This document shows, piece by piece, positions 27,786 to 48,461 of a DNA stretch of 64,000 nt. The notes below the pieces were generated by a model. It saw nothing but the letters and a program-made list of their open reading frames with translations, searched no databases and was not told the origin of the DNA. The DNA is taken from positions 237,008-301,007 of IMG/VR virus record IMGVR_UViG_3300036770_007539. One strand, given 5' to 3'. The translations under genes were made by a program, and so were the position numbers. Each line of letters opens with the position of its first letter. Within the stretch, counting starts at the first letter, position 1.

Positions 27786-27800
27786 ATTTTCTCCAAATTA

Positions 27801-32987: not shown

Positions 32988-33116
32988 GGAGAGGATTGGT
33001 GGGAGTTGGTGCCAGAAGTAAATAAGAGCCATAAGTACGTTTACCCTGCTCGGGCGTCCGCTTCGACACGCCTGTCATCCCCCTCCATCGCTACCTGCCC
33101 CCTTTTGCCCCATTTC

Positions 33117-33258
33117 TTGACAATCTCTGGTTTGTTGCTATATATATGGTGTGACGACGAGACGAGACGAAACGAAACGCATCGCGAAACGATGCGAAAC
33201 GGAACGAATCGGCTCACGAACGACGCACGCTTGACAAGTGCCGGATCGGCGCTAGGAT
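33117..33258 (+). promoter_or_regulatory. Tandem sigma70-like promoters, unit 1
   Basis: TTGACA 33117-N16-TATATA; TTGACA 33231-N16-TAGGAT. Confidence 0.75.
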
Positions 33259-33340
33259 AGTGGTGTGGCGGATCGTCACGCCGTTGCCGGACGGATTCCG
33301 GTATCTCCCATGGGGGCAACGCCCCCGGAAAGGATCTCCC

Positions 33341-33634
33341 GTGTCAAAGGGAGCGATCCGTAGGAGAGCCCGTCGCTACAGGGAGCACGGGCTCTCCTTC
33401 ATCGTGCGCGTTCGGCTGGCGAAAGCCGCCGAACGCGCGATGAGCGACGAGGGCGGTCTCCGCGCCCTCGGCGCGGAGATGATCACGCATCGCACGTACA
33501 CAATGTGTACGTGCGATGCGTGCGACGAGTGGATCGCCGAGTGGAAGCTCGGCGATTTCACCATCAAAACCGACAGCGGATACATCGTATCCGCTGTCAA
33601 AAACCAACCCGTGCTCCCCTCTTCGGAGGGTTGA
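33341..33634 (+). CDS. Hypothetical protein
   Basis: AAAGGA RBS and GTG start; stop lies inside a repeat hairpin. Confidence 0.55.
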   Translation: MSKGAIRRRARRYREHGLSFIVRVRLAKAAERAMSDEGGLRALGAEMITHRTYTMCTCDACDEWIAEWKLGDFTIKTDSGYIVSAVKNQPVLPSSEG

Positions 33635-33642
33635 GCGCGGGT

Positions 33643-33701
33643 TGCGTCGCCAAGGTCCGCTTTCGAGCGGAGGGGGTTCGATTCCCCCGCGACGCACTAC
33701 C
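33643..33701 (+). ncRNA. Anticodon-less tRNA-like element 1
   Basis: TGCGTCGC/GCGACGCA stem; T-arm GGGGG-TTCGATT-CCCCC. Confidence 0.7.
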
Positions 33702-33761
33702 GCGCCAGACGGATTCTGGTGTTTCTCGAATGGGGGACATATGTCCCCGGAGGATAAGAGC

Positions 33762-34496
33762 ATGATGAAAAAGTACAATATTGCCGCGAAGTCCGCTCCC
33801 GCTCCCGCCCCCGCCGCCGCCCCCGTCGCCGCCGCCGTCCTCGCCGCCCCGGAGAACCCGGGCGTGTGGTTCGACCTCCACATCACGCGATTCAAAGAGG
33901 TGGGTTGCTCGGCTCGGGGCAACTTCGCGATGGTGCCGTCGGGCACCGTCGCGATCCTAGGGGCGAGCGACTACGAAGTCGGAGACGCCCTTTTGTCATA
34001 CGACTTCGATCGGGAGGGGCACACGCCCCTCAGCACCGCCCTCTCGCTCCGCATCTGGGCGGACCACACGTGGTGGGGAAAGGAATACCTCAAAGGCTGG
34101 GGCGCCGCCGCCCGCCGAAAGGCGGAGCGGATCTTGAACGACCTCGCGACGCCCGGTGGTAGCGACGAGGAGGACTACCCGGCATGGGTAGCTGCTGCAA
34201 AGCAGTATACTCTCTACTGCTTCCCCCCGTTCGACTTGTATCAGCGTATTCTTGTTGTGGAGTCTGACAGGTGCGGGTTCATAACCGCCCGCGTCGACGA
34301 GCAGCATCCGGATGAGAGCAAGCCCATGCACGGGGGCTGGCTGGTGCTTGCCCTTGCTCGAACGCAAGACCTGCCATCCAAGACCCGCCAAGCATGGGAG
34401 ATGTGCTCCCCGCTGTGGAGGGCGAGAGCCCTCGAATACATCCGTATGGTTGGATTTAAGGTTACGCCAGGAAGTTTCCTGGCTGATCTGGTCTGA
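33762..34496 (+). CDS. Hypothetical protein with an Ala/Pro-rich N-terminal linker
   Basis: RBS and ATG after a structured leader; 244 aa. Confidence 0.65.
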   Translation: MMKKYNIAAKSAPAPAPAAAPVAAAVLAAPENPGVWFDLHITRFKEVGCSARGNFAMVPSGTVAILGASDYEVGDALLSYDFDREGHTPLSTALSLRIWADHTWWGKEYLKGWGAAARRKAERILNDLATPGGSDEEDYPAWVAAAKQYTLYCFPPFDLYQRILVVESDRCGFITARVDEQHPDESKPMHGGWLVLALARTQDLPSKTRQAWEMCSPLWRARALEYIRMVGFKVTPGSFLADLV

Positions 34497-34538
34497 CCTG
34501 TCTCCCCCGCGCTCCCCTTCGGGGTCGAGCGCGGGGGC

Positions 34539-34611
34539 GTGCATCGCTTTGGAGTCTCGTTCCCCCGCAAGGGGGAACGAGGAGGGGGTTCGATTCCCTC
34601 ACGATGCACCA
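34539..34611 (+). ncRNA. Anticodon-less tRNA-like element 2
   Basis: GTGCATCG/CGATGCAC stem; TTCGATT T-loop; ends ACCA. Confidence 0.75.
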
Positions 34612-34898
34612 TGAGGAACATTCGTTCCTCCCGTTGTCGGACGGATTCCGGCTTCTCGTTGGGGCGCTCGCGCCGCCGAGCGGGAGGCGTTCCGCGCTTC
34701 CCTTCGCGGCGATGAGCGCCGTGAGGGGAATCGCGGTCGCCGCCTCGGCGACCGCGACGTCATCTGACCCATCTGCCCCTGGCTCCCCTCGCAAGAGGGT
34801 CGAGCCGGGGGCATCACCCCGAGGAACATTCGTTCCTCACCCTGACCGGAGGGTGTCCGGTGCTTCCAAGGGGATGAATGTCCCCGGAAAGGATTCTG

Positions 34899-35111
34899 AT
34901 GACCATCGGCGAGGCGGTCGACCGCCTCGTCTCGGAGGGGTACAACCCCGACCGAGACGACCTCCCCGCATGGGCAAAGGGGAAGGGGTTCCGACAGGAA
35001 CTCCGGACCCTCCCCTGCGGGGAGGAGTGCTGCGGGCAAGGGTACGCCCTTGTCCGCGGCAACGACGACGAGGAGGAGGAGCGGTTCATTCCGCTTCCTC
35101 CTCTCTTCTGA
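34899..35111 (+). CDS. Hypothetical protein with CGEECCG motif (paralog of 40796..41086)
   Basis: AAAGGA RBS; shared motif. Confidence 0.6.
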   Translation: MTIGEAVDRLVSEGYNPDRDDLPAWAKGKGFRQELRTLPCGEECCGQGYALVRGNDDEEEERFIPLPPLF

Positions 35112-35163
35112 GACTCGCCCCTGGCTCCCCTCGCAAGAGGGTCGAGCCGGGGGCATTTTTTCT

Positions 35164-35408
35164 GCGCTACATTGGCTATTTGGAGATCTAGTGTATTCGA
35201 AGCCGTACTATAAGAAATATTCTTCTTTCAATGACTTCTTTTTCTTTTCTCTTTTCCAAGAAAGAGGGGGGAGGGGGAGTCAATGAAAAAAAATCTTCTT
35301 TACAAGAGGCTTTACCTTTCTTTTTAGAGATCATGTTTCTTCGAAGCCAGTGCAGGTCTGACATTTCTAATCAATCGTTCGTTTTATTACTCTCTTGATA
35401 GCTAGGGC
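35164..35408. repeat. AT-rich spacer element 1
   Basis: GCGCTACATTGGCT ... AGCCAGTGCAG ... GCTAGGGC. Confidence 0.75.
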
Positions 35409-35433
35409 ATATTGTCGTGTTTGCGTGCGTAAC

Positions 35434-35535
35434 TTGACAAGTGATGGATCGTTGCTAGTATGTAGGGTGTGAGATGAACGCAAACGAGACAACGCAAGCG
35501 CGCTTGATTGACAAGCGGTGCAGCGGTGCTAGTAT
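35434..35535 (+). promoter_or_regulatory. Tandem sigma70-like promoters, unit 2
   Basis: TTGACA 35434-N16-TAGTAT; TTGACA 35508-N16-TAGTAT. Confidence 0.8.
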
Positions 35536-35819
35536 GCGGTCATCGAAGATTCGACGCAGCATAGGGGCGTCGAGACGAGCCGCCGTTAGCGGTGCTCTAA
35601 CAGAGCAGTCACGGGCTAGCCCGTGAATCGAGCCGGGCGATTCCCGGTGGTGAGCAAGGGATCTTGCGGCTTTGCCGGTTGAAGCCGCAAGATCCCTTGC
35701 CCTTGATAATCTGTGGAAGCTGTGCATAATGGTGTGCATGGCTTTGGGGGTCAATCCCCGCTTTGCCGGAGAGTGTCCGGTAACGTCCAAGGGGACGCAT
35801 GTCCCCGGAAAGGACTTTC

Positions 35820-36185
35820 TTGAACCTCCAAAAGAGGATCGAGGAAGTGGACCAGGCGCTCGCGCGTCTGGTCCAGAGCGAGATCGTCGTCGCGCAGGTA
35901 GTGCTCGACGATCTGATCTACCTCCACCGCCCCGCCAGCCGTCAGCACGTCTTGCGACAGCGGGCGGATCGCCTACTCCAGGATCGGGACTGGCGAGTCC
36001 AGCCGATCCTGGAGCGGCGCGAGCGACTGGAGCGCCTTCGCGGGCTGCTCGTCGCTCGCGCCGCACGCGCCGCAGGTCGCGACACCTGCGGCTACTGTGG
36101 GTGGGACAACGGTCCCATCGACCCCGCCACAGGTCGCGGTCTCAGCCGTCAAGGCTGGGATTGCGGCTATTGCGGGGGGAACTAA
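35820..36185 (+). CDS. Coiled-coil protein with a C-terminal Zn finger
   Basis: CGYCGWD..CGYC; TTG start after AAAGGA. Confidence 0.6.
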   Translation: MNLQKRIEEVDQALARLVQSEIVVAQVVLDDLIYLHRPASRQHVLRQRADRLLQDRDWRVQPILERRERLERLRGLLVARAARAAGRDTCGYCGWDNGPIDPATGRGLSRQGWDCGYCGGN

Positions 36186-36243
36186 CCCTTCTCTCCGCAT
36201 CGTTTCCTCCGCGCTCCCCTTCGGGGTCGAGCGCGGGGGAGGC

Positions 36244-36312
36244 TGCATCTTCTCGCTTGGAGGCGAGCGCCCCTTGCGGGGCGGACGGGTTCGATTCCCG
36301 TAGGATGTACCA
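36244..36312 (+). ncRNA. Anticodon-less tRNA-like element 3 (four-arm)
   Basis: TGCATCTT/AGGATGTA; GG-containing D-like loop; 4-nt-loop middle arm; ACGGG-TTCGATT-CCCGT; ends ACCA. Confidence 0.75.
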
Positions 36313-36380
36313 TGAGAGCTTGTCTCTCCCGCGTCGGACGGATTCCGATTGTCTGCGATCGAGAAAGGAGGACTGTCCAC

Positions 36381-36722
36381 ATGGCACAGTACCTCGGAAA
36401 CGCCTTCTCGCTCGGTATGCTCGATTGTCTCACGGCGGAAACGCCTGTGAGCGTCGAGTGTGCCGCCTTCACGCTCGACGAGGCACGCGCCTACGTCGAG
36501 CACAACCGCCCGACCTCGACGGTCGGGCACCTCGACACGGCGGAACTCTTCTCCGCCATGTTGGGGTCTTCCGTGGAGATGCGCCGCGTCTCCACGTCTC
36601 TGATCGGCGGGGATGAGATCCTCGTCGGTCAATACAACGGTCCGCGTCTTCCGGAGGGGGCGAAGAGCCTCCCCGAGGGCGCCAAGGTCCGCTGGATTCT
36701 GGCGCGCATCGTCGCGCGCTGA
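36381..36722 (+). CDS. acrIII-1: DUF1874 / AcrIII-1-like viral ring nuclease (anti-CRISPR type III)
   Basis: YLGNAFS, TLDEAR, STVGHLDTAELFSAMLG, EMRR, GDEIL, RLPEG match the STIV B116 / SIRV1 gp29 / YddF pattern. Confidence 0.8.
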   Translation: MAQYLGNAFSLGMLDCLTAETPVSVECAAFTLDEARAYVEHNRPTSTVGHLDTAELFSAMLGSSVEMRRVSTSLIGGDEILVGQYNGPRLPEGAKSLPEGAKVRWILARIVAR

Positions 36723-36881
36723 GGGTCCACACTCGCCCCTGGTTCCCCGCAAGGGTTGAGCCGGGGGCGTCCCTTCGGGGGAATATCTTTGGAAACTGCC
36801 TGCAAGTTCTGGCTTGTGGGCAGCTTCGAGGGATTGTCCCTTGACCGTAGCTAGGCGGACACCTAGCATCAGGAGGGTCAC

Positions 36882-37106
36882 ATGACTCTTCAAGAAGCAA
36901 TCCGAGAGGTCCGAGACCTTTCGGGAATCCCGGAGGAGCAGCTGCTCCGGGATTGGAACGAGAAGAAGTGCCAGTCTATGGACTGGCACTTCGACACCGA
37001 GACGGTCGAAGACCGTCTCGGAGAGTTGGTGACGTACTTCTACGTGGAAATCATCCCCGAAGGGGATGGTTTCCGCGTCAGGTCTCGAAAAGAGACCTGG
37101 CGATGA
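36882..37106 (+). CDS. Hypothetical protein
   Basis: AGGAGG RBS; 74 aa. Confidence 0.6.
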   Translation: MTLQEAIREVRDLSGIPEEQLLRDWNEKKCQSMDWHFDTETVEDRLGELVTYFYVEIIPEGDGFRVRSRKETWR

Positions 37107-37413
37107 GCCTCGCCCCCGCGTTCCCCTTCGGGGTCGAGCGCGGGGGCACTCGCGGGTTGAGCCGAAAGGTTCCCCGCTCTGACTTCAGGTGGCTCCGACG
37201 CTGATAACGGCGCGGGTTTGATACCCGCTGGAGGACACAGAACATCCTCCTAGCGAAAAGCCGCAGCGGGGAGTGCTTCCGATTCGGGTTACGGTGCAGG
37301 TTTGAGTCCTGCTCTCCCGCGTCACGGGGGTCGGTTGAGACGCCGCCGAACGGAAGCAACGCCTGATTGCAACAACAATAAAGGGGGCGCATATCCCCCG
37401 GAAAGGATATGGT

Positions 37414-38127
37414 TTGAGGACCATCTGCATCGGCGACATCCACGGATGTATCGCCGAGTTTCAAAAGCTCGTGGAGGTTCTCGCGCCCACGAGCGAGGAT
37501 CGGATCGTCCTGTTGGGCGATCTGATCGACAAGGGTCCAAAAAGCGCAGAAGTGGTTCGCTTCGCCCGCGAGATCGGAGCGACCACCATTCAGGGCAACC
37601 ACGAGGAGAAGGCTCTTCGATGGTTTGCCCACGAGAAGACTCGGATCGCCACGGGGAAGGCGAATCCGATGAGCCCTCCCGAGCACAAGGTTCGGGAGTG
37701 GAACACGATCCCCGCCGATGATCGGGAGTGGCTGGCAGCTGCTCCCGTTTACACGGATCTCGGCTCCGGGTTCCTCGCCGTTCACGGCGGGATGCTGCCC
37801 GGGGTCAAGCCACAAGATCACAAGAAGGGAATCCCCCTCCGCCTGAGGTTCGTCAACGACAAGGGCAAGTTTCTGCCCCTCGACGACGACCACGGCGATC
37901 CTGAGGGAGGTATCCCCTGGTACCAGGTCTACGATGGGGAGCACTCCCTGGTGGTGGGTCACACGGTTCACAGCCTGGAGTATCCCCGAATGGATCGTAT
38001 CGGGGATCGGGTGATCTGGCACCTGGACACGGGTTGCGTTCATGGTGGTCGCCTGACGGCGCTCATCCTGGAGACGCAAGAAGTCGTCCAGGTACAAGCG
38101 TCCCAAGTCTACAAGGCGCGGGACTGA
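37414..38127 (+). CDS. Calcineurin-like metallophosphoesterase (ApaH/PrpE/Pnkp-phosphatase-like)
   Basis: GDIHG, GDLIDKG, GNHE, HGG, GHT, LDTGCVHGGRLTA. Confidence 0.9.
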   Translation: MRTICIGDIHGCIAEFQKLVEVLAPTSEDRIVLLGDLIDKGPKSAEVVRFAREIGATTIQGNHEEKALRWFAHEKTRIATGKANPMSPPEHKVREWNTIPADDREWLAAAPVYTDLGSGFLAVHGGMLPGVKPQDHKKGIPLRLRFVNDKGKFLPLDDDHGDPEGGIPWYQVYDGEHSLVVGHTVHSLEYPRMDRIGDRVIWHLDTGCVHGGRLTALILETQEVVQVQASQVYKARD

Positions 38128-38447
38128 GGCGATTGGATTGTTCCTGCGTTCCCCGCAAGGGTTGAGCGCAGGAACAAGTTTCAAGAAGAAAGGAAGAGGA
38201 AGTGGAAATCTGTATGGTTTCGGGTTTTCCGACTCCTTGCGGGTGTTTTGCCTGCCAGGAGTCGGTGGAGCAGGCGCGCGGTGGCAACTGCCACTGCAGC
38301 GCCTGCTGCAAGGTTCGCTTCGGAAACGAAGCGAACGAAGCGAACGAAGGTTGCCGATGGGAGGCGGTTCGACCGCCTCGTCCTCGGCAGTAGGAATCGC
38401 CCCATCGCGTTCCCCCTTGCGGGGTCGAGCGCGATGGGGATTTTTCT

Positions 38448-38683
38448 GCGCTACATTGGCTATATCTGAGATCTTGACATATTCGTTGCTGATGCAGAAT
38501 CTTTTTTTCTTCAATGATTTTTCTTTTTTCTTTTCTACGGGAGGGAGAAACAAGAGAATCAATGAGCTAAGATATTCTTCAAAAGAAACGACTTGTCATT
38601 TATCTTTTACGAGATCAAACACATTCGGAGCCGATGCAGCTCTGATTCGTTTATCAAACGTTTGTTTAGTTCTCAGCTAGGGC
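38448..38683. repeat. AT-rich spacer element 2
   Basis: GCGCTACATTGGCT ... AGCCGATGCAGC ... GCTAGGGC. Confidence 0.75.
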
Positions 38684-38717
38684 TAGGGTGTTCGTTTCTG
38701 CGTGAATCTGTGCAGCC

Positions 38718-38873
38718 TTGACAACGGGCGGATCGATGCTAGATTGTATGGTGTGAGAGAGAGCAACGAATCGAAACAAGCGAGCGAATGAGCGAACGCA
38801 TAAGCCGCGACGGTAGCGGTTAGCGGGTAGCGGATAGCGCGTAGCTTGACACGGTTGGATTCGCTGCTAGGCT
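38718..38873 (+). promoter_or_regulatory. Tandem sigma70-like promoters, unit 3
   Basis: TTGACA 38718-N16-TAGATT; TTGACA 38846-N16-TAGGCT. Confidence 0.75.
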
Positions 38874-38894
38874 TTCTCATAGAAGGGAGGTTAC

Positions 38895-39200
38895 ATGCAA
38901 CAGATTTGTGGAAGATGCTCCGGAAGGGAGAGTCATTCCTGTTGCCCTGATTGCAGGGGAAAGGGCTGGCTTTCCCGCGCGGACGTTCGCGTTCTTCGCT
39001 TGAAGCAGGCGGCATTCTGTTTGCTTCACGAGAAGGCGCGCGAGCATTGGCTCACGCTGAGTGAGCCGCGTCCGCGCCAGGAGTCCTTCGTGCTGGACTA
39101 CGTGTTCAAGCACGAGCAATGGTACTTCGAGACGATCGTCTCGAAGTTTACCCCGGAGCAGAAGCGCACGCTTCTGCGTCGGTTCCCCTGCAATCCCTGA
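38895..39200 (+). CDS. Hypothetical protein with a DnaJ-type Zn motif
   Basis: CGRCSGR..CPDCRGKG. Confidence 0.6.
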   Translation: MQQICGRCSGRESHSCCPDCRGKGWLSRADVRVLRLKQAAFCLLHEKAREHWLTLSEPRPRQESFVLDYVFKHEQWYFETIVSKFTPEQKRTLLRRFPCNP

Positions 39201-39307
39201 ACCGGGTAGAGCGAGCCCTCGCAAGGGGGCTCGTTCCCTACAACCGGATCTGGATCGTGATTGATCTAGGTTCGATTATAGGGATTACCCCTATTGAAAG
39301 GAGGAGC

Positions 39308-39445
39308 ATGAAGTTTCTGGAAAAGCTCTCGAATCGATTGCCCTACGTCGTTCAAGAGTCCCCGCTCGACCCGATCACTTGGATCTTTGCGGTCCCTTTG
39401 CTGGTCCTTTACGGGATTGGCTACATTGTCGGGGGATTGACGTGA
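39308..39445 (+). CDS. Small membrane peptide
   Basis: GAGGAG RBS; hydrophobic C-terminal half. Confidence 0.5.
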   Translation: MKFLEKLSNRLPYVVQESPLDPITWIFAVPLLVLYGIGYIVGGLT

Positions 39446-39615
39446 AAGACGACTTCCTCGACGATATCATCGCAAAGATCGACTCTCTTCGCATCGAGGA
39501 GTGCGAGAGCGGGGCGATCATTCGCAAGCCGGAGGTGAGCGACTTCAAGCGTCCCTCCCTTCTACCCAAGATCATCAACATGCGATCCTTGCTGGTCGAT
39601 TCTAGCAAGTCGTGA
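39442..39615 (+). CDS. Hypothetical protein
   Basis: GTG start overlapping the upstream stop. Confidence 0.45.
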   Translation: MKDDFLDDIIAKIDSLRIEECESGAIIRKPEVSDFKRPSLLPKIINMRSLLVDSSKS

Positions 39616-39621
39616 ACGGCA

Positions 39622-39687
39622 GCATCCCCTCGTGTGGTTGCGAGCACCTGAAAAGGTGGACAGGTTCGATTCCTGTGGGATGCACTA
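39622..39687 (+). ncRNA. tRNA-like element 4 (compact cloverleaf)
   Basis: GCATCCC/GGGATGC; CTCG-TGTGGTTG-CGAG; CACC-TGAAAA-GGTG; ACAGG-TTCGATT-CCTGT; ends ACTA. Confidence 0.75.
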
Positions 39688-39747
39688 CCGCGTCGGACGG
39701 ATTCCGATATCTCTTGAATGGGGGCAAAGCTCCCGGAAGGATTCTTC

Positions 39748-40131
39748 ATGTCGAATGATGACCGTATCGAGCGATTTGCTCGCTCGATCGCCTTGAAGCT
39801 GTACAACGATTCATGGTCCGAGAACGACCTCAAGTACTTTCTCGTACCCCGCCCGCCGCCTGCGTGGGTGGTTTGCAATGTTGCAGCTTCCAATGCGTTC
39901 ATTAGAGGCGGCGAACCTCTGGATCGAGAGGGCATGATCGCTCTTGCTGGTGATTGTGCAAGGAAAATCTTTGCAATCTTCCAGGAGGAGATGTTCATAG
40001 ATTCGGAGGTGACTGTTCCATCTCCCCTCTACCAGCAGGAAGATATCGAGCAGGCGATCTTGACCATCCCTGCGAGGGTGGACGAGGCTCTCGAAGAAGC
40101 GAAGAAACCCCCGATTCGTGCCATCGCATGA
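39748..40131 (+). CDS. Hypothetical protein
   Basis: RBS after a structured leader. Confidence 0.6.
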   Translation: MSNDDRIERFARSIALKLYNDSWSENDLKYFLVPRPPPAWVVCNVAASNAFIRGGEPLDREGMIALAGDCARKIFAIFQEEMFIDSEVTVPSPLYQQEDIEQAILTIPARVDEALEEAKKPPIRAIA

Positions 40132-40293
40132 GTTTGGTGTGGTATCGTCCCTGGCTCCCCTCTTCGGAGGGTCAAGCCGGAGGCACCCCTTCGGGTGAAT
40201 ATCTTTGGAGCCTGCTTGCAAGTTTCTTGTAGGCAGGTTCGAGGGATTATCTCTCGACCGATACCGGACGGATATCCGGCAAAGGGAGACATC

Positions 40294-40629
40294 ATGTACG
40301 ATGATGATGTGCTCGAAGCTCTGCTGGTGCTCTTGACTGAGCATCAGCGGTTGGAGAGGCTTCTGAACGCTCAGAAGTCTCGTGGGATCGCCTTCGAATG
40401 CCTTCTCCGCCAGCAGAAAGCTGTCGAGAAGGCTCTCTTCTCTCGCACGATGCGGGGGAAGATTCGCCGCCAGCTCCGCGACGCCGCCGACAAGGCGGCA
40501 GTCGAGAAGATGCACGCAGCCGCCGCCAAGAAGCTGCGAGAGGCAGAAGCTGAGAAGCGTTGGGAGGCGGAGGAGCGAATGAAGCAAACGTGGCGAGAGC
40601 TTGGCGCGGTCGCCGCCAAATTTCCGTAG
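40294..40629 (+). CDS. Coiled-coil hypothetical protein
   Basis: GGGAG RBS; Glu/Lys/Arg/Ala-rich. Confidence 0.6.
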   Translation: MYDDDVLEALLVLLTEHQRLERLLNAQKSRGIAFECLLRQQKAVEKALFSRTMRGKIRRQLRDAADKAAVEKMHAAAAKKLREAEAEKRWEAEERMKQTWRELGAVAAKFP

Positions 40630-40795
40630 TGTTCTAGATCGAATCCGTCCCATCGCGTTCCCCTTCGGGGTGAGCGCGATGGGGCGACCCTTCATGGGAA
40701 TATCTTTGGAAGCTACCTGCAAGTTTCTTGCAGGTAGCTTCGAGGGATTGTCCCTTGATTGAAACCAGGCAAATACCTGGTCTTTTGGAGGCATC

Positions 40796-41086
40796 ATGGG
40801 CATCATCATCGAAGTTGTGAACCACCCCTCTGCTAACGAAAAAACAAAATGGTGGATGATTGAGACGTTGGAGAACGTCTTCAACATCTCCTTGACTGCT
40901 GAGGAGGATCGCCAGTTGGATATGGTGATGGAGAATTTGCCCGTGGGAGGTACGATTCGTATCTCTCACGACAGTCTTCCTGTGGAGTACTTACTTCACC
41001 GAGCGCAGGAACGAGACGTTCCTTACTCTTGCGGTGAGGAATGCTGCGGAATCGAATCCTACGAATGGGTTCGGTTGTTGACATGA
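40796..41086 (+). CDS. Hypothetical protein with CGEECCG motif
   Basis: GGAGG RBS; paralog of 34899..35111. Confidence 0.65.
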   Translation: MGIIIEVVNHPSANEKTKWWMIETLENVFNISLTAEEDRQLDMVMENLPVGGTIRISHDSLPVEYLLHRAQERDVPYSCGEECCGIESYEWVRLLT

Positions 41087-41206
41087 CTTGGGAGGATCTT
41101 GGGGGAGTGGCAACGTTGCTGCTCCTCTTTCTGATGGTTCTCTTTGCGTGAAGTCCTGTCCGGGGCGAGGTTGAGCCGAAAGGTTCCCTCGTTCCGGGTC
41201 TTTTCT

Positions 41207-41444
41207 GCGCTACACTGGCTATTTCTTTGGAGATCATGCATGTTCAGATTCTTTTTTGTAATCAAAATCTTTCAGTGTTTTTCCTTTTTCTTTTTTCACA
41301 ACATAAGAGAAATAAACAACAATGATAAATGTGGTTTCAATAAACGATTTCTAACGATCATTTCTTTTCAAAGAGACATGAATGTTCAGAGCCTATGCAG
41401 CCCTGATTGTGTTATCAAACGTTCGTTTAGTTCTTAGCTAGGGC
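41207..41444. repeat. AT-rich spacer element 3
   Basis: GCGCTACACTGGCT ... AGCCTATGCAGC ... GCTAGGGC. Confidence 0.75.
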
Positions 41445-41479
41445 ATAAAGCGCGTTAGATCGTGAATATAGGCGTGCGC

Positions 41480-41595
41480 TTGACAAGTAGCTGATCGTTG
41501 CTAGTATGTAGGGTGTGAGAGGGAGAGTGTGAACGGAAACGCTAGCAAGCGCGAACGGGCTAGCGGTTGACAACGGCTCGAGCGTGGTGTATACT
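41480..41595 (+). promoter_or_regulatory. Tandem sigma70-like promoters, unit 4
   Basis: TTGACA 41480-N16-TAGTAT; TTGACA 41567-N17-TATACT. Confidence 0.8.
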
Positions 41596-41615
41596 GCATC
41601 ACGGTAGGAGGAAGC

Positions 41616-41789
41616 ATGTACGTCATTCAGGTAGGCAGGGGACCCAAGGGTTCGTATCGTACCCGCTACACGTTCAGTGCGGAGGATTGGACCAAAGCAA
41701 GCTTCTACTACGCTTGCATCAATGTGGGGTACGGGTACAAGAAGCGCCTTGTGCGCGATGGCAAGGTGATCGCACGCTGCTACAGCTGA
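41616..41789 (+). CDS. 57 aa basic protein (MYVIQVGRGPKGSY...)
   Basis: AGGAGG RBS; hand-translated, below the ORF-track cutoff. Confidence 0.6.
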   Translation: MYVIQVGRGPKGSYRTRYTFSAEDWTKASFYYACINVGYGYKKRLVRDGKVIARCYS

Positions 41790-41803
41790 AAGGACAAGTG
41801 AGC

Positions 41804-41959
41804 ATGAAAGTAACGCCTGCAATCGTCAAGGCTCAGATTCGTGCGGCGAGGGCGCAAGCCTCTCGCCTGAAGAAGATGATTGCGCTGCTGGAGCAGCGCG
41901 ACCGCGCATACAGGCACTTGGAGGAGCTTGGTGATAGATTGGCTCACTTGAAGAAGTGA
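41804..41959 (+). CDS. Small coiled-coil protein
   Basis: AAGGA RBS. Confidence 0.5.
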   Translation: MKVTPAIVKAQIRAARAQASRLKKMIALLEQRDRAYRHLEELGDRLAHLKK

Positions 41960-42068
41960 GCCGGAATGGGCGAGCCCTTGCGGGCTCGTTCCCTGCAATC
42001 GGACCTGGATCGTCACTGATCTAGGTTCGACTCCAGGGAATCTTTCCTGGTCTTTCGGAGGTGTGTTT

Positions 42069-42530
42069 ATGGTCAAGGTCGTCATCATGCAAGGTGTCCC
42101 TGGTTCGGGCAAGTCGAGCTACGTCAAGTCGCTGCGACCCGTGGCGACGGTGGTCTGCTCGGCGGATACGTTCTTCGAGTCGTGGAGCCCGGAAACGGGT
42201 GCTACCTATAACTTCGACCCGTCCAAGCTCGGCGAGGCGCACGGCGAGTGCCTGTTGAGTTTCGTGGACGCCATGGAATATGCCAACCAAGACGGCGATA
42301 CGGTGGTGGTGGATAACACCAACACCACCGCCATGGAGATTGCACCCTACATGGCGCTCGCGAACGCCTACGGGTGCGAGGTTGAGATCGTGCGAGTCCA
42401 GTGCGACCCCGAGATCGCCGCTGCTCGCAACATTCACGGCGTTCCGCTGGCTTCGATCCGCCGCATGGCAGACAACATCGCGAACTTCCACGCCCCGCCA
42501 TTCTGGCGGTTCAAGCTGACGGAAGTGTGA
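42069..42530 (+). CDS. P-loop kinase (AAA_33 / polynucleotide kinase / N4BP2-like)
   Basis: GVPGSGKS Walker A; SADTFF; VVVDNTN; ARNIHGVP. Confidence 0.85.
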   Translation: MVKVVIMQGVPGSGKSSYVKSLRPVATVVCSADTFFESWSPETGATYNFDPSKLGEAHGECLLSFVDAMEYANQDGDTVVVDNTNTTAMEIAPYMALANAYGCEVEIVRVQCDPEIAAARNIHGVPLASIRRMADNIANFHAPPFWRFKLTEV

Positions 42531-42632
42531 ACTAGGACGGGCGAGCCTGCAAGGGCTCGCTCCCTGCAATCGGGATTCGATACGGATCGAATCTCGATTC
42601 TAGGGAATGTCCCCTAGCAACATGGAGGCTTT

Positions 42633-42890
42633 ATGCCCTTGTTCGTTTCTTTCGAGGATGACAACATCGACCCCACCTACGCCGACGCTTCCGACGCGGT
42701 GATCGTTTCTGCGCTGCACGATGCGGCGTTGGAAACCAATCCGTGTGTGGGTCGCGGAGTGCGGCATCGTGCTCCGGTCGCGCCTCGCACCGAAAAGGAG
42801 ATCATCGCCTTCGCCAAGGTGATGGGATGGCGAACGGAAGGATCGGGGAGTGATCTTGTGATCTACCCCGCTGTTTCCGAGGATGACTGA
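42633..42890 (+). CDS. Hypothetical protein (paralog of 47019..47270)
   Basis: MPLFVSF.D...DPTYA shared. Confidence 0.7.
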   Translation: MPLFVSFEDDNIDPTYADASDAVIVSALHDAALETNPCVGRGVRHRAPVAPRTEKEIIAFAKVMGWRTEGSGSDLVIYPAVSEDD

Positions 42891-42963
42891 TAGGACGGGC
42901 GAGCCCCTTGGCAACAAGGGGCTCGCATCTCTCGACACTCAATCCGAAACGTGAAAGGCTGAT

Positions 42964-43128
42964 GTGGATCCGAAAGAAAAAAAGCAATCTATGTTGGACC
43001 GAATGAACGCGAATAACGCGGAGATTCATCGGAAGATGAAAGAAGCTGCGGAGAAGAATGGGGAAATGGATTCCTCGCTGCGCGAGGCTATTCTCAAGAT
43101 CGGAGCAAAACCCTCTTCGGAGGGTTGA
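42964..43128 (+). CDS. 54 aa hypothetical protein
   Basis: Hand-translated; ends PSSEG inside a repeat hairpin. Confidence 0.45.
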   Translation: MDPKEKKQSMLDRMNANNAEIHRKMKEAAEKNGEMDSSLREAILKIGAKPSSEG

Positions 43129-43185
43129 GCGCGGGCACCAATCGCCGCAAGGTGCGGCGATGATCAAACGTGAAAGGCTGGAATA

Positions 43186-43443
43186 ATGTTCTCGTTGAAA
43201 AATGTTTCAGTTCAGCGGACATTCATCCTGATGATCGGGGATCGTATTCAAGGCGTCGCCAAAAGCGAGCAAGAACTACGCCCCATTGCTAAGGAGGCGT
43301 GGCGTCGGTACGGGGTCGCGCGCCCTCAATCTCCCGGAAAGGTTTTCGTGGTAGAAACCACGATTCCCTTTTTGAAGGGAATCGAATGGGTGGAGACTAC
43401 ACCACCGAAGTTCGTGTGCGATATCGACCTGGATAGTGATTGA
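43186..43443 (+). CDS. Hypothetical protein
   Basis: 85 aa ORF. Confidence 0.55.
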   Translation: MFSLKNVSVQRTFILMIGDRIQGVAKSEQELRPIAKEAWRRYGVARPQSPGKVFVVETTIPFLKGIEWVETTPPKFVCDIDLDSD

Positions 43444-43526
43444 TCCAGGTTCGATGAAGGAAGTTTGAACCACAATGAGAAGCGAGCCCTCGCAAGGGGG
43501 CTTGCTTCCTAGACAAAGGAAGCTCC

Positions 43527-43988
43527 ATGACGTTATCAAGAGATGTCATGATCGAAGCATACAACGATGCGGTGGCAGCAGCATACGGGGCAATCCGTTC
43601 GCGCTGCCCTGTAGAACTGGCTACCGCTGCCGATCTTCTCGCAAAAACTTCACCTTCGGAGGAATACTTCGATAATCACGCCATCACTCAGCACAAGACC
43701 TTGACGCATCACGTCGAGTTTTATCGTGCTCAAGAACGCGACGACGACTTTTTGAATGCTCTGTTCGACGAGTTTGCCGACAATCACGACATGGATCTCG
43801 ACGACGACGACGCAGCTAGTTTCGCTCGTAGTTGTGTAAACAACTACGGCTCGAGCTTTCTTGTTTATCAAGAGGCGCGAGGTTCGTTTCCTGGTGGCGA
43901 ATGTACGGCGGGGGGAATCGCCTCTGCCTGGAATATCATTCGCGATCAGATCAAGTTTGCAAAGAAGGAAAAGGAGGTATTGCCATGA
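43527..43988 (+). CDS. Hypothetical acidic protein
   Basis: AAGGAAG RBS; 153 aa. Confidence 0.6.
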   Translation: MTLSRDVMIEAYNDAVAAAYGAIRSRCPVELATAADLLAKTSPSEEYFDNHAITQHKTLTHHVEFYRAQERDDDFLNALFDEFADNHDMDLDDDDAASFARSCVNNYGSSFLVYQEARGSFPGGECTAGGIASAWNIIRDQIKFAKKEKEVLP

Positions 43989-44398
43989 ACAAGTACGCCA
44001 GCATCAAGGAATACGTCGAAGCTCTCTACCGAGAGGGCAACAATCAGGTTGCGGATACGTTGCAGCGTATCCGTTCGGGCGAGTCCAACGACGTTTCCGA
44101 GGTTTTCAAACCTACGGAAGCTCTCCGAAACGCAGGCTTCGAGGTAATGCCTCAAGAAGTCACCGATCCGGTCCTGGAAGCCTTCGGATTGCGCTCTTTC
44201 GGAGAGGGTGCTTTTGCGGTATACGACATGTATGGTCGAACCCCTTATCACAAGCTCTCCAGTGCGGAGATTCTGGAGCGTTTCCGTGCCAAGACGGTCA
44301 CGCATGAAGTCGATGTTCTTTGCGAGTTTCTTCGCTACTATCTCGAAGGCGTTTTTCGTCGCGCCATGTACGAAGGCGAGCACTATCAAAAGAAGTAA
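43985..44398 (+). CDS. Hypothetical protein
   Basis: AAGGAGG RBS; ATGA coupling. Confidence 0.65.
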   Translation: MNKYASIKEYVEALYREGNNQVADTLQRIRSGESNDVSEVFKPTEALRNAGFEVMPQEVTDPVLEAFGLRSFGEGAFAVYDMYGRTPYHKLSSAEILERFRAKTVTHEVDVLCEFLRYYLEGVFRRAMYEGEHYQKK

Positions 44399-44525
44399 CT
44401 GAATCGTAAGGGCGAGCCTCTTCGGGGGCTCGCTCCCTGCAATCGAATATTGACTCCCGGCATGTTCTGGGATACAGTCGATGTTCGATTCTAGGGAGTT
44501 TCCCCTAGTTTCTTCGGAGGAAAGC

Positions 44526-44735
44526 ATGCGTTGTTTCATGTATGGCGAAGTTCACACGATGGACGGCAAGCGCAAGATGGTGCGACGTTACTTCGACGGA
44601 TCGGGGAACGTCTACGCAGCTGCACTTCAAGAACTTTACAAGCGTAAAGACAAGGGTTCCCCTTGGAGAGGTGATGCAGTCAACGTCATCACTCCTTTGG
44701 GACAGAGGGTGATCGTCGAAGTTCCTCATCTGTAA
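44526..44735 (+). CDS. Hypothetical protein
   Basis: GGAGG RBS after a switch-like leader. Confidence 0.6.
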   Translation: MRCFMYGEVHTMDGKRKMVRRYFDGSGNVYAAALQELYKRKDKGSPWRGDAVNVITPLGQRVIVEVPHL

Positions 44736-44788
44736 CCAATCTCAACACCTGGAGCATGTGTCTAAACTGCTCCTTTCCAAAGGAGAAT

Positions 44789-44914
44789 ATGTCCAAACGC
44801 AAGAACTCCGATGAAGTTCTCGAAGCTCGAATCGCTCATCGTCTCGCCATGATTGCCGCTTTGGAGGCGGAAATCGCGGAACTTCGCAAGCAACAAGGAA
44901 AGGATAACCAATGA
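44789..44914 (+). CDS. 41 aa coiled-coil peptide
   Basis: AAAGGAG RBS; hand-translated. Confidence 0.5.
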   Translation: MSKRKNSDEVLEARIAHRLAMIAALEAEIAELRKQQGKDNQ

Positions 44915-45189
44915 CCGCTCGATCTGCTCGTCGACAGCACTCCAAGTATCTGCGTGAGATGGGTGTGCCCTTCATCATGCGCCAGAGTCTCGCCAAGACT
45001 CGCTACCAAGGATTGATGGATGACCATTACTTGAGTCGAAAAACTCAGCTGGTCACTACCTACTACGACAGCAACGGTTGCGATTGCTGTCCTCCTTCCA
45101 AGATTCAATATTGGGAGGTGGTGGTGCAGAAAAAGACCTATCGAATCCAAACGGAAGATGGTCGAATCCAATCTTGCCTCAAGTTCTGA
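44911..45189 (+). CDS. Hypothetical protein
   Basis: ATGA coupling; 92 aa. Confidence 0.55.
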   Translation: MTARSARRQHSKYLREMGVPFIMRQSLAKTRYQGLMDDHYLSRKTQLVTTYYDSNGCDCCPPSKIQYWEVVVQKKTYRIQTEDGRIQSCLKF

Positions 45190-45237
45190 GGCTTGGGGAC
45201 GCATCTGGGGCTGAACGGTCCTGGGTGCGTCCCCGAA

Positions 45238-45489
45238 GCGCTACATTGGCTCAACAGTGATCTTTGCATGTTCAGAACGTTCTTTATGCAAAAGCATCTT
45301 TTTTCTTTCAATGATTGCTATTTCTTCTTTCAAGTAACGACATGAATAATCAATGAATGACAAGTATCTTTCAAACAAAGAACTTTCAAATCATATATCT
45401 TTTCAACCAGATCTTTGTTCGTTCAGAGCCTATGCAGTCCTGACTTTTTCACTGGCTTTTTGACGGTTTTCGTCCCTTCTGGCTAGGGC
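45238..45489. repeat. AT-rich spacer element 4
   Basis: GCGCTACATTGGCT ... AGCCTATGCAGT ... GCTAGGGC. Confidence 0.75.
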
Positions 45490-45522
45490 TAGATCGCTTG
45501 TTTTCGCGCATATTCGCGCGCC

Positions 45523-45649
45523 TTGACAATCGGCGGATCGTTGCTAGTATGTAGGGTGTGAGAGAGAGCACGAACGAACGAATGAACGAACGAACGCTAG
45601 CACGACGCTAGCGCGATGCGTTTGACGCGGCTCGATTCGATGCTACGTT
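45523..45649 (+). promoter_or_regulatory. Tandem sigma70-like promoters, unit 5
   Basis: TTGACA 45523-N16-TAGTAT; TTGACG 45622-N16-TACGTT. Confidence 0.75.
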
Positions 45650-45683
45650 GCAAGTGTCGCCGATACATGGCGAGGGAGGCAAT

Positions 45684-48390: not shown

Positions 48391-48400
48391 AAGAGATACC

Positions 48401-48461
48401 GCATCGACTGGTCCGCACCCGCAAGGGTGCGGAGGAGGTTCGATTCCTCCACGATGCACTA
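48401..48461 (+). ncRNA. Anticodon-less tRNA-like element 5
   Basis: GCATCG/CGATGC; CTGGT linker; GCAA hairpin; GGAGG-TTCGATT-CCTCC; ends ACTA. Confidence 0.75.

What the first reader, a model, noticed from the sequence alone, without database searches (positions are those of the whole stretch)
33287..40279. Conserved CGGAT-loop hairpin followed by an RBS-adjacent hairpin in gene leaders
Seen: 5-bp stems with loop CGGAT at 33287 (CCGGA/TCCGG), 33705 (CCAGA/TCTGG), 34637, 36334 and 39693, and loop CGGATA at 40264. Loop variants occur at 34846, 35766 and 36851. The stem covaries while the loop is fixed. Several are followed by GGGG-N4-7-CCCC directly before GAAAGGA and the start codon. Inference: a protein-binding loop for translational control or 5'-end protection of processed mRNA. 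The GGA in the loop recalls CsrA/RsmA sites.
Basis: partly seen in the sequence, partly recalled or inferred. Interest (0 to 1): 0.6.

Follow-up and report, generated by a model that had tools for sequence, protein, structure and literature searches.

The report
Conserved leader hairpin in phage early operons
A small RNA hairpin with a conserved CGGA loop sits at a fixed distance before many early genes of an uncultivated giant phage, next to tRNA-like elements; together they look like cut-and-control signals for single genes, but no RNA data exist to prove it.

Summary
Five + strand hairpins with a 5-bp stem and a CGGAU loop lie at 33287, 33705, 34637, 36334 and 39693. Five positional homologues carry other loops: GGGUG, GAGUG, CGGACA, CGGAUA and CAAAUA. 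All sit in gene leaders of the first three sigma70-type operons of a 52-63% GC island. The island lies inside a 33% GC, 301-kb metagenomic jumbo phage. Chance predicts 0.3 such hairpins; 6 are seen.

- **Structure:** with relatives from other metagenomes, all six stem pairs show compensatory changes (98.7% paired). The G·U pairs fit only + strand RNA. The loop is the best-conserved part.
- **Geometry:** the hairpin ends 38-42 nt before the start codon when a GGGG/CCCC hairpin abuts the Shine-Dalgarno. It ends 14-15 nt before it otherwise.
- **Context:** upstream lies a pseudo-tRNA (acceptor and T arm, no anticodon loop) or a long helix, after a 3' hairpin without a U-tract.

Best reading: an RNA operator and 5'-proximal hairpin of modular intercistronic cassettes in "punctuated" early mRNAs. 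The loop is probably read by a protein. A CsrA-type reader fits only partly. The function is inferred, not shown. No RNA data exist and the host is unknown.

The parts
33287..33301 (+). Leader hairpin CCGGA-CGGAU-UCCGG before g1 (33341-33634). It lies about 22 nt after the predicted start of transcription from promoter 33231-33258.
33705..33719 (+). Leader hairpin CCAGA-CGGAU-UCUGG before g2 (33762-34496). It starts 8 nt after the discriminator of pseudo-tRNA 33644-33699.
34637..34651 (+). Leader hairpin UCGGA-CGGAU-UCCGG (U·G pair). It is followed by a cassette with a GGGAGG Shine-Dalgarno but no start codon at the usual distance.
34846..34860 (+). Positional homologue CCGGA-GGGUG-UCCGG before g3 (34899-35111).
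35766..35780 (+). Positional homologue CCGGA-GAGUG-UCCGG before g4 (35820-36185).
36334..36348 (+). Leader hairpin UCGGA-CGGAU-UCCGA before g5 (36381-36722, STIV_B116-like). It is identical in relatives L045:110 and L047:2713.
36850..36867 (+). A2-type hairpin GCUAGG-CGGACA-CCUAGC, 4 nt before the Shine-Dalgarno of g6 (36882-37106).
39693..39707 (+). Leader hairpin UCGGA-CGGAU-UCCGA before g11 (39748-40131). It starts 8 nt after the discriminator of pseudo-tRNA 39622-39687.
40264..40279 (+). A2-type hairpin CCGGA-CGGAUA-UCCGG, 2 nt before the Shine-Dalgarno of g12 (40294-40629).
40764..40781 (+). A2-type positional homologue ACCAGG-CAAAUA-CCUGGU before g13 (40796-41086). Its loop has no GGA.
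33312..33334 (+). RBS-adjacent hairpin GGGGGC-AAC-GCCCCC, directly followed by the Shine-Dalgarno GGAAAGGA (g1).
33733..33754 (+). RBS-adjacent hairpin GGGGAC-AUAU-GUCCCC plus Shine-Dalgarno GGAGGA (g2).
34870..34893 (+). RBS-adjacent hairpin GGGGAU-GAAU-GUCCCC plus Shine-Dalgarno GGAAAGGA (g3).
35791..35814 (+). RBS-adjacent hairpin GGGGAC-GCAU-GUCCCC plus Shine-Dalgarno GGAAAGGA (g4).
37383..37407 (+). RBS-adjacent hairpin GGGGG...CCCCC plus Shine-Dalgarno GGAAAGGA before g7 (phosphoesterase, 37414-38127). There is no CGGAU hairpin upstream.
39720..39741 (+). RBS-adjacent hairpin GGGGGC-AAA-GCUCCC plus Shine-Dalgarno GGAAGGA (g11).
33644..33699 (+). Pseudo-tRNA: 7-bp acceptor stem, one UUCG hairpin, T arm GGGGG-UUCGAUU-CCCCC, tail A-CUA.
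34541..34611 (+). Pseudo-tRNA: acceptor stem, 12-bp GCAA hairpin, T arm, tail A-CCA.
36245..36312 (+). Pseudo-tRNA cloverleaf: D-like arm, UUGC tetraloop in place of the anticodon loop, T arm, tail A-CCA. Orthologues in L045 and L047.
39622..39687 (+). Pseudo-tRNA cloverleaf: D-like arm, 4-bp arm with a 6-nt loop, T arm, tail A-CUA.
48401..48461 (+). Fifth pseudo-tRNA of the family. It is not followed by a CGGAU hairpin.
34504..34537 (+). Example of the GC hairpin next to the stop codon (…GCUC-CCC-UUCG-GGG-UC-GAGC…) without a U-tract. Paralogues at 33608-33641, 34774-34813, 36205-36240, 36735-36768, 37112-37147, 38138-38177 and 40646-40686.
35117..35160 (+). The same hairpin type followed by a U-tract: the intrinsic terminator at the end of operon 1. 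A like one lies at 38400-38447.
36769..36846 (+). A2 upstream structure: a small hairpin, a long irregular helix, and the 7-bp hairpin CGAGGGA-UUG-UCCCUUG. Paralogues at about 40184-40259 and 40688-40760, and two in L047.
33231..33258 (+). Sigma70-type promoter of operon 1 (TTGACA-16-TAGGAT). Near-identical promoters at 35434, 35508, 38718, 41480, 45523, 49235 and 51625.

Best explanation
**Proposed role.** The CGGAY-loop hairpin is a cis-acting RNA element of modular intercistronic 'expression cassettes'. These cassettes belong to the GC-rich, host-RNA-polymerase-type early operons of an uncultivated jumbo phage.

**Cassette layout.**
1. Stop codon.
2. A stable GC hairpin without a U-tract.
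3. A putative processing element. This is either a pseudo-tRNA that keeps only the acceptor and T arm, or a long irregular helix.
4. The CGGAY hairpin.
5. Optionally a G4/C4 hairpin abutting the Shine-Dalgarno.
6. The start codon.

**Proposed mechanism.**
- The polycistronic RNA is cut at the processing element. Candidates are RNase P with RNase Z/BN at pseudo-tRNAs, and RNase III at long helices.
- The CGGAY hairpin then becomes the 5'-proximal structure of the downstream cistron.
- There it acts as an operator. Its exposed, conserved CGGA loop, held at a fixed distance from the start codon, is bound by a protein. That protein could be a host CsrA-type factor or an unidentified phage factor.
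- Binding would set translation and/or stability of about ten early cistrons together.

**Shown:** the hairpin, its covariation, its strand, its fixed geometry and its neighbours.

**Inferred:** the cleavage, the binding and the effect on expression.
For: - **Enrichment and strand:** 6 observed against 0.3 expected, and none on the - strand.
- **Covariation:** over 13 hairpins, including relatives L045 and L047, all 6 stem pairs carry compensatory changes. 98.7% of cells are paired, against 19-50% when the partner is slid. 0 of 500 shuffles reach the observed score. G·U pairs occur at three stem positions (10-27, 11-26 and 12-25), mostly at the outermost pair, and would be C·A on the other strand.
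- **Unbiased sampling of the A2 copies:** the five A2 copies were picked by position, downstream of the conserved CGAGGGA-hairpin, not by their stems. They have five different stems.
- **Loop conservation:** the loop is 100% identical among the five window paralogues. Flanks are 40-53% identical.
- **Loop type:** purely structural hairpins of the island use stable tetraloops (GCAA 28x, GAAA 13x, UUCG 9x). CGGAU is the commonest loop that is not a tetraloop.
- **Fixed distance to the start codon:** 38-42 nt in five A1 leaders, 32 nt in g5, and 14-15 nt in the three window A2 leaders. It is 16-17 nt in the two L047 copies, counted from the sequences.
- **Upstream pseudo-tRNAs:** their acceptor and T stems are intact and covary. 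Their tails are A-CCA or A-CUA, like the CCA-less true tRNAs of the phage. They give weak tRNA-Sec and mascRNA hits.
- **Transcription signals:** promoters and U-tract terminators occur only at operon ends, so the internal modules are not transcription units.
- **Orthologous conservation:** the hairpin and the 10 nt before it are unchanged in L045, while the protein downstream is 82% identical.
- **Independent sample:** a freshwater relative (run X5) keeps the hairpin with a one-sided A-to-G change that preserves pairing. It then switches to another leader type.
Against: - There is no RNA evidence. All runs that hold the locus are DNA.
- Thermodynamics is weak. Folding z-scores of leaders range from -0.1 to -2.4. 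In two contexts (34610-34665 and 36311-36385) the MFE fold competes with the hairpin.
- Three of ten window positional homologues have loops without GGA (GGGUG, GAGUG, CAAAUA). Loop reading therefore cannot be uniform.
- In the two A-CUA cases the hairpin would lie 8 nt from a predicted RNase Z cut. That is farther than classic 5'-terminal stabilisers tolerate (textbook knowledge, not tested here).
- No candidate binding protein was identified. The phage record has no CsrA, RegA, RegB or RNase III.
- Only a few close relatives exist. The paralogues share descent, so the shuffle statistics overstate independence.
Confidence: 0.45

Rival explanations
1. CsrA/RsmA-type control. The host's CsrA dimer bridges the ACGGAU in the hairpin and the GGA of the Shine-Dalgarno. 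This would repress translation, or the abundant early leaders would titrate CsrA. This is a specific form of the best explanation.
For: - GGA is exposed in the loop in 10 of 13 hairpins.
- ACGGA is present in A1 and in two A2 copies.
- A second GGA or ACGGAGG-type Shine-Dalgarno lies 2-29 nt downstream.
- Published framework: A(N)GGAX in hairpin loops with a site at the RBS, and cooperative binding of the dimer (PMC4005645).
Against: - The loop is a pentaloop and the A is paired. It is not the ANGGAX hexaloop.
- Three homologues lack GGA.
- The phage record has no CsrA.
- The host is unknown and may lack CsrA. A control cyanobacterium did not ring.
- Repression of a phage's own early genes needs a rationale.
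Confidence: 0.2
2. A purely structural element. It would be a 5' stabiliser or insulator that shields the processed 5' end and keeps the ribosome-binding site free of upstream pairing. The loop would be conserved only by descent.
For: - It lies directly after the putative processing elements and before the Shine-Dalgarno.
- Every leader type of the island has a hairpin next to the Shine-Dalgarno.
- The loops differ in 3 of 10 copies.
Against: - The loop is more conserved than the stems and far more than the flanks.
- The island uses stable tetraloops wherever only stability seems to matter.
- There is an 8-nt single-stranded lead in two cases.
Confidence: 0.25
3. A recombination module. The repeated leaders would be PeSL-like mobile regulatory cassettes whose main role is to promote gene shuffling. 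The hairpin itself would have no separate RNA function.
For: - The modules are repeated in front of small ORFan genes.
- In run X5 a contig follows the window up to the hairpin's end and then continues with another leader type. Contig joints occur at the modules.
- PeSLs are described in PMC2839356 and PMC4122927.
Against: - Compensatory changes and G·U pairs point to selection on an RNA fold.
- The per-gene modules carry no promoter.
- The fixed distance to the start codon is not needed for recombination.
Confidence: 0.07
4. A boxB-like antitermination site. It would be read by an arginine-rich N-like protein. The candidate is g1, whose N-terminus reads KGAIRRRARRYREHG, and this would let RNA polymerase pass the internal GC hairpins.
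For: - The shape is a 5-bp stem with a pentaloop.
- The first copy lies between the first promoter and g1, whose N-terminus is arginine-rich.
- Each gene is followed by a strong hairpin.
Against: - The loop is not GNRA-like.
- There are up to four copies per operon, locked to start codons rather than to terminators.
- The internal hairpins lack U-tracts.
- g1 has no homologue anywhere and matches no N family.
Confidence: 0.03

Closest known systems
CsrA/RsmE binding hairpins (hcnA leader, RsmZ stem-loops; B. subtilis hag leader, from memory)
   Same: A GGA is presented in a short hairpin loop upstream of a GGA-containing Shine-Dalgarno. There are several copies per transcript.
   Different: - The loop is a pentaloop CGGAU or hexaloop CGGAYA, not ANGGAX.
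- The A sits in the closing pair.
- Some copies lack GGA.
- No CsrA partner is known.
- The context is a phage early operon.
Translational operators next to the Shine-Dalgarno (T4 gp43 operator, E. coli thrS operator; textbook knowledge)
   Same: A short hairpin with a sequence-specific loop lies at a fixed distance 5' of the ribosome-binding site. The same signal could be shared by several mRNAs, as with T4 RegA targets.
   Different: - No repressor has been identified.
- The element is repeated before about ten unrelated small genes.
- The element is coupled to putative processing signals.
tRNA punctuation, plant-mitochondrial t-elements and mascRNA (textbook knowledge; weak Rfam RF01684 and tRNA-Sec hits)
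   Same: tRNA-like structures embedded between coding regions of a polycistronic RNA. They keep the acceptor/T-arm half that RNase P and RNase Z recognise.
   Different: - This is a phage of bacteria.
- The elements are pseudo-tRNAs with tetraloops in place of anticodon loops.
- Cleavage is not shown.
- They are followed by a dedicated conserved hairpin.
T7 early-region RNase III sites (textbook knowledge)
   Same: Structured intercistronic elements in a host-polymerase early operon. A stable hairpin is left at the 3' end of the upstream message.
   Different: - The candidates here are pseudo-tRNAs and about 20-30-bp irregular helices.
- No RNase III gene is present in the phage record.
- Cleavage is untested.
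PeSL cassettes of T4-type phages (PMC2839356, PMC4122927)
   Same: - Repeated regulatory cassettes flank small variable early ORFs.
- Mosaic joints occur at the cassettes.
- The operon boundaries here are terminator-plus-promoter composites.
   Different: - The per-gene modules have no promoter and carry RNA-level covariation.
- T4-type membership of this phage is not established. There is no Gp23 match.
Lambda nut boxB
   Same: A 5-bp stem with a pentaloop. The first copy lies in the leader of the first gene after an early promoter.
   Different: - The loop is not GNRA-like.
- There are many copies per operon, tied to start codons.
- No boxA or N homologue was found.

Membership tests
CsrA/RsmA target site | GGA exposed in a hairpin loop or single strand | tested here: met
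   10 of 13 aligned hairpins have GGA in the loop. Three do not (GGGUG, GAGUG, CAAAUA).
CsrA/RsmA target site | High-affinity form: an ANGGAX hexaloop directly on a stem (PMC4005645) | tested here: not met
   The loops are CGGAU (5 nt) or CGGAYA (6 nt). The A of ACGGA is the closing A-U pair, or is absent.
CsrA/RsmA target site | A second GGA site overlapping the Shine-Dalgarno, within reach of the dimer | tested here: met
   Shine-Dalgarno GGAAAGGA, GGAGGA or AGGAGG lies 2-29 nt after the hairpin.
CsrA/RsmA target site | A CsrA-family protein is present in the system | tested here: inconclusive
   No PF02599 match in the 301-kb phage record, which is 71% complete. The host is unknown.
CsrA/RsmA target site | Binding and translational effect | not testable with these tools
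   Needs EMSA and reporter assays.
tRNA-like processing element (tRNA punctuation / t-element / mascRNA-like) | Acceptor stem stacked on a T arm with the canonical T loop | tested here: met
   Five elements have a 6-7-bp acceptor stem, a 5-bp T stem and loop UUCGAUU. The stems covary between copies.
tRNA-like processing element (tRNA punctuation / t-element / mascRNA-like) | Reaches the curated tRNA or mascRNA model thresholds | tested here: not met
   tRNA-Sec 23.7-26.8 bits (threshold 47). mascRNA 26.7 bits (threshold 42.5). ARAGORN does not call them.
tRNA-like processing element (tRNA punctuation / t-element / mascRNA-like) | Cleavage by RNase P or RNase Z | not testable with these tools
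   No RNA run holds the locus.
5'-terminal stabiliser hairpin (ompA type) | The hairpin lies within a few nucleotides of the mRNA 5' end | tested here: inconclusive
   The predicted ends leave 8 nt (33705, 39693) or a preceding extra hairpin (34637, 36334). The true ends are unknown.
Lambda N / boxB nut site | A GNRA-like pentaloop on a 5-bp stem | tested here: not met
   The 5-bp stem and pentaloop are met. The loop CGGAU is not GNRA-like.
Lambda N / boxB nut site | One site per operon upstream of terminators, with an N-family protein | tested here: not met
   Up to four copies per operon, locked to start codons. g1 is an ORFan without a family match.
PeSL (promoter-early stem-loop cassette) | A composite of a stem-loop terminator and an early promoter flanking variable ORFs | tested here: not met
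   Promoters occur only at the seven operon starts, not at the per-gene modules. The operon boundaries themselves are PeSL-like.
Intrinsic terminator / attenuator | A GC-rich stem followed by a U-tract | tested here: not met
   The tails are UAUCUC, UGUUUCUC or UUGUCUG, and the stem has only 5-6 bp. One weak consensus match at 34636.

The most novel reading that the evidence does not exclude
This phage lineage builds its early operons from self-contained RNA cassettes. Pseudo-tRNAs and long helices would punctuate the polycistronic transcript for host RNase P, RNase Z and RNase III. Each released cistron would then carry the same CGGA-loop operator at a fixed distance from its start codon. A dedicated regulator (host CsrA-type, or an unknown phage protein) would read that operator and so govern a whole set of unrelated ORFan genes together. 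This would be a bacterial-virus counterpart of mitochondrial tRNA punctuation, coupled to a shared translational operator.
Probability: 0.2. Interest if true: 0.8.

Novelty: new variant of a known kind. Interest (0 to 1): 0.55.

Why it matters
If the model holds, it shows how a giant phage expresses many unrelated small early genes. Each gene would get a portable RNA cassette that is cut out, stabilised and regulated on its own.

- It would extend tRNA-type punctuation of mRNAs to bacterial viruses.
- It would define a new shared operator hairpin.
- It would supply compact, natural insulator parts for synthetic operons.
- It makes testable why an AT-rich phage keeps a GC-rich, hairpin-laden early region.

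Tried and rejected
**Searches for relatives**
- DNA-pattern scans of viral contigs for T-loop plus GACGGATTC gave only unrelated phages and true tRNAs.
- A scan for the AT-rich operon repeat found nothing.
- A scan for the A2 hairpin gave 5 chance hits.
- Protein-guided locus searches found nothing in viral contigs. In metagenome contigs they only re-found L045 and L048.
- g1, g2 and g11 have no homologue in the large protein sets.
- More distant g5 homologues lie in unrelated, tightly packed phages without these leaders.
- A genome-contig scan for CCGCG-hairpin gave 86 hits in diverse GC-rich taxa. None had the leader context, so they are chance.

**Known families**
- Rfam has no family for the hairpin or the A2 structure.
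- The phage record has no CsrA, RegB, RegA or RNase III.
- It has no Gp23 match, so 'T4-like' rests only on one 31%-identical virion protein.

**Host**
- Inference from phosphatase, B116-like protein or intron-tRNA similarity gave no consistent taxon.
- Relatives cannot be drawn for a virus record.

**Reads**
- Only DNA contigs are available, so there are no RNA ends.

**Readings rejected**
- DNA palindrome or operator: the stems differ too much, and the G·U pairs fit one strand only.
- Intrinsic terminator: there is no U-tract.
- Decayed tRNA genes: the anticodon arms are replaced by stable tetraloop hairpins, and the acceptor and T arms stay intact.

No alternative genetic code was used.

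Full report
**Setting**

- The window is the last 64 kb of a 301,007-bp linear virus record, estimated 71% complete. The record averages about 33% GC.
- Window positions about 33,100-52,000 form an island of 52-63% GC.
- The island is flanked on both sides by AT-rich phage DNA. On the left are minus-strand virion and collagen-like fibre genes. On the right are tRNA-Lys, tRNA-Leu and a group I intron.
- All island genes read on the + strand. Their GC3 is 0.45-0.83, mostly at least 0.6. For the 18 genes tested (33341-42890), leave-one-out codon statistics are positive.
- Contigs of relatives from an independent assembly (L045, L046) show the same fall from 64% to 40% GC within one contig. The island is therefore a lineage feature and not an assembly chimera.
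- Four DNA runs of one subsurface study hold the locus. Two freshwater runs hold pieces that are 90-97% identical. No RNA run holds it.

**The observation**

- The island's + strand holds six hairpins with a 5-bp stem and a CGGAT loop. Five lie in leaders. One, at 50096, lies inside a gene.
- Dinucleotide shuffles give 0.3 on average and a maximum of 2. None occurs on the - strand.
- The named variants are positional homologues: 34846 GGGTG, 35766 GAGTG, 36851 CGGACA and 40264 CGGATA. I add 40765 CAAATA.
- The G4/C4 hairpin abutting the Shine-Dalgarno is present at 33312, 33733, 34870, 35791 and 39720. It also occurs at 37383 without an upstream CGGAT hairpin. Its inner pairs change compensatorily (GC:GC, AC:GU, AU:GU).

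**Is it an RNA structure?**

- I aligned 13 hairpins: ten from the window, L045:110, L047:2355 and L047:3215.
- All six stem pairs show changes on both sides. 98.7% of cells pair, against 19-50% when the 3' partner is slid. No shuffle out of 500 reaches the observed covariation.
- G·U pairs occur at three stem positions, mostly at the outermost pair, and would be mismatches on the other strand. The element is therefore read as + strand RNA, not as a DNA palindrome.
- The five A2-type copies were taken by position, downstream of a conserved 7-bp hairpin CGAGGGA-UUR-UCYCUYG. They have five different stems (CUAGG, CCGGA, CCAGG, CUGGA, CCAAG). This limits ascertainment bias.
- Thermodynamic support alone is modest (z from -0.1 to -2.4). 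In two contexts the MFE fold competes with the hairpin.

**Loop conservation**

- Among the five window paralogues the loop is 100% identical, the stems 77-83% and the 9-nt flanks 40-53%.
- Over 12 non-orthologous hairpins the first four loop bases are 73% identical, against 31-40% in the flanks.
- Hairpins of the island and its relatives that seem purely structural use stable tetraloops: GCAA 28x, GAAA 13x, UUCG 9x. CGGAU is the commonest loop that is not a tetraloop.
- This pattern argues for recognition of the loop.
- Three homologues (GGGUG, GAGUG, CAAAUA) show that recognition cannot be uniform.

**Anatomy around it**

- Sigma70-type promoters occur only at seven operon starts: 33231, 35434/35508, 38718, 41480/41567, 45523, 49235/49333 and 51625. 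They read TTGACA-16-TAGTAT, mostly with TG before the -10 hexamer.
- U-tract terminators occur only at operon ends.
- Inside operons each intergenic region is a module.
- In type A1 the order is as follows:
  1. A GC hairpin of the family …GCUC-CCC-UUCG-GGG-UC-GAGC… without a U-tract.
  2. A pseudo-tRNA.
  3. The CGGAU hairpin.
  4. The G4/C4 hairpin abutting the Shine-Dalgarno.
- The five pseudo-tRNAs lie at 33644, 34541, 36245, 39622 and 48401.
  - They keep a 6-7-bp acceptor stem and a 5-bp T stem with loop UUCGAUU, and both stems covary.
  - The anticodon arm is replaced by UUCG, GCAA or UUGC hairpins.
  - They end in A-CCA or A-CUA, like the CCA-less true tRNAs of this phage.
  - They score below the thresholds of tRNA-Sec and mascRNA models.
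- In type A2 a long irregular helix and a 7-bp hairpin precede the CGGAYA hairpin.
- Distances are fixed. The hairpin ends 38-42 nt before the start codon in five A1 leaders, 32 nt in g5, and 14-15 nt in the window's A2 leaders. It ends 16-17 nt before it in L047, counted from the sequences.
- In two cases the hairpin begins 8 nt after the pseudo-tRNA discriminator. In two others an extra small hairpin intervenes.
- In several A1 leaders the MFE fold pairs a UCC/UCUC/GUCC run before the G4/C4 hairpin with part of the Shine-Dalgarno. This is noted and not pursued.

**Relatives**

- The g5 protein (STIV_B116-like) gave relatives.
- L045 (82% identical protein) and L047/L048 (89%) keep the pseudo-tRNA and an identical hairpin, with the 10 nt before it also unchanged. 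The downstream leader has diverged.
- L046 (68%) lacks A1 and A2 but shares other leader types.
- In freshwater run X5 a contig follows the window through the hairpin. It carries a one-sided A-to-G change that keeps pairing, then continues with the g11-type leader. The modules are therefore mosaic joints.
- None of the differences listed for any run falls inside a hairpin, but that list is truncated.

**Mechanism**

- The best-supported reading is an RNA operator that is also the 5'-proximal hairpin of a processed cistron.
- The processing step is inferred from the pseudo-tRNAs and the long helices. RNase P and RNase Z/BN recognise the acceptor/T-arm half (textbook knowledge). The long helices resemble the RNase III sites of the T7 early region (textbook knowledge).
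  - GGA lies in the loop, ACGGA is present in most copies, and a second GGA lies in the Shine-Dalgarno.
  - The published high-affinity form is an ANGGAX hexaloop (PMC4005645), which these loops are not.
  - The phage record encodes no CsrA, and the host is unknown.
- A purely structural stabiliser or insulator remains a serious rival.
- A PeSL-like recombination role (PMC2839356, PMC4122927) may coexist, but it does not explain the RNA covariation or the fixed distance.
- A boxB/N-like reading is unlikely despite the arginine-rich N-terminus of g1.

**Novelty and verdict**

- No Rfam family covers the hairpin, its A2 companion or the pseudo-tRNA modules.
- No paper found with the terms tried describes them.
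- I rate it a new variant of known kinds: a leader operator or stabiliser hairpin, and tRNA-type punctuation. It is lineage-restricted, structurally well supported and functionally unproven.

No alternative genetic code was used.

Noticed in passing
window 59107-59397: A tRNA-Leu(UAA)-like gene appears to be split in its anticodon loop by a group I intron. Rfam Intron_gpI matches 59131-59336. The exon halves are GCCTAGG…ACTTAAAA and …GTGGGTTCGAATCCCACCCTAGGCA. ARAGORN does not call it.
   Followed up: partly
window 33100-52000 against the rest of G000: A 52-63% GC island (GC3 mostly 0.6-0.8) lies inside a 33% GC jumbo phage. Relatives L045 and L046 show the same 64% to 40% gradient. Paralogous genes sit at different GC: 47390-47848 against 52511-52957, and 49398-49853 against about 51800-52232.
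   Followed up: partly
window 39210-39300, 41970-42060, 42540-42625, 44405-44520, 46495-46580, 46920-47015, 47275-47385, 50665-50760; L045 and L046 leaders: Type B leader. It has a GC hairpin (GGGCGAGCCC-GCAA-GGGCTCGC), then CCCTRCAATC…GATTCTAGGG closing a 14-20-bp helix whose inner sequence differs completely between copies, then a short hairpin (CTAGGG…CCCTAG) that competes for the AGGGA strand, then ACGGAGG. It looks like an RNase III-type site with a processing-dependent refold.
   Followed up: partly
window 44745, 47850, 52370, 52965, 55000, 57050; L045 about 3680, 5535, 6180: Type C element CACCTGGGcAaGTGtnTAAACTGCCC. It has a 5-bp covarying stem and an 11-nt loop ending in TAAAC. It stands before genes and directly before the true tRNA genes, also in the AT-rich part.
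   Followed up: no
window 35155-35430, 38440-38715, 41200-41478, 45228-45520, 48940-49233, 51330-51622: About 250-nt AT-rich direct repeats. The first four copies begin with T-rich…GCGCTACAyTGGCT. Each lies between a U-tract terminator and a near-identical strong promoter. Downstream follow (ACGA/GCGA)n-like low-complexity runs and often a second promoter. These operon boundaries are PeSL-like.
   Followed up: partly
window 33362-33598 (inside g1); also 34731-34757, 36965-37021, 39124-39182, 45836-45861: Long perfect palindromes (10-19 bp arms) lie inside coding regions. g1 alone holds at least five, and the MFE is -242 kcal/mol for 379 nt. g1 still scores as coding but is an ORFan, so it might be partly or wholly a structured RNA.
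   Followed up: partly
window 34652-34790: A leader cassette (CGGAU hairpin, G-rich hairpin, GGGAGG) has no start codon at the usual distance. It is followed by very stable hairpins. It is either a degenerate cassette or a non-coding RNA.
   Followed up: no
window 35633-35647: A further hairpin of like shape, CCGGG-CGAUU-CCCGG, lies in the roughly 280-nt multi-hairpin leader of operon 2. It may be a diverged copy.
   Followed up: no
window 37414-38127 and 42069-42530: The island encodes a calcineurin-like phosphoesterase (NinI-like) and an AAA_33 kinase-like protein. Homologues of the kinase lie in L045 and L046. The pair recalls RNA end-healing enzymes.
   Followed up: no
window 25695-29921 (- strand): Two paralogous proteins of about 700 aa have collagen triple-helix repeats and a Laminin_G_3 domain. 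They are likely fibres.
   Followed up: no
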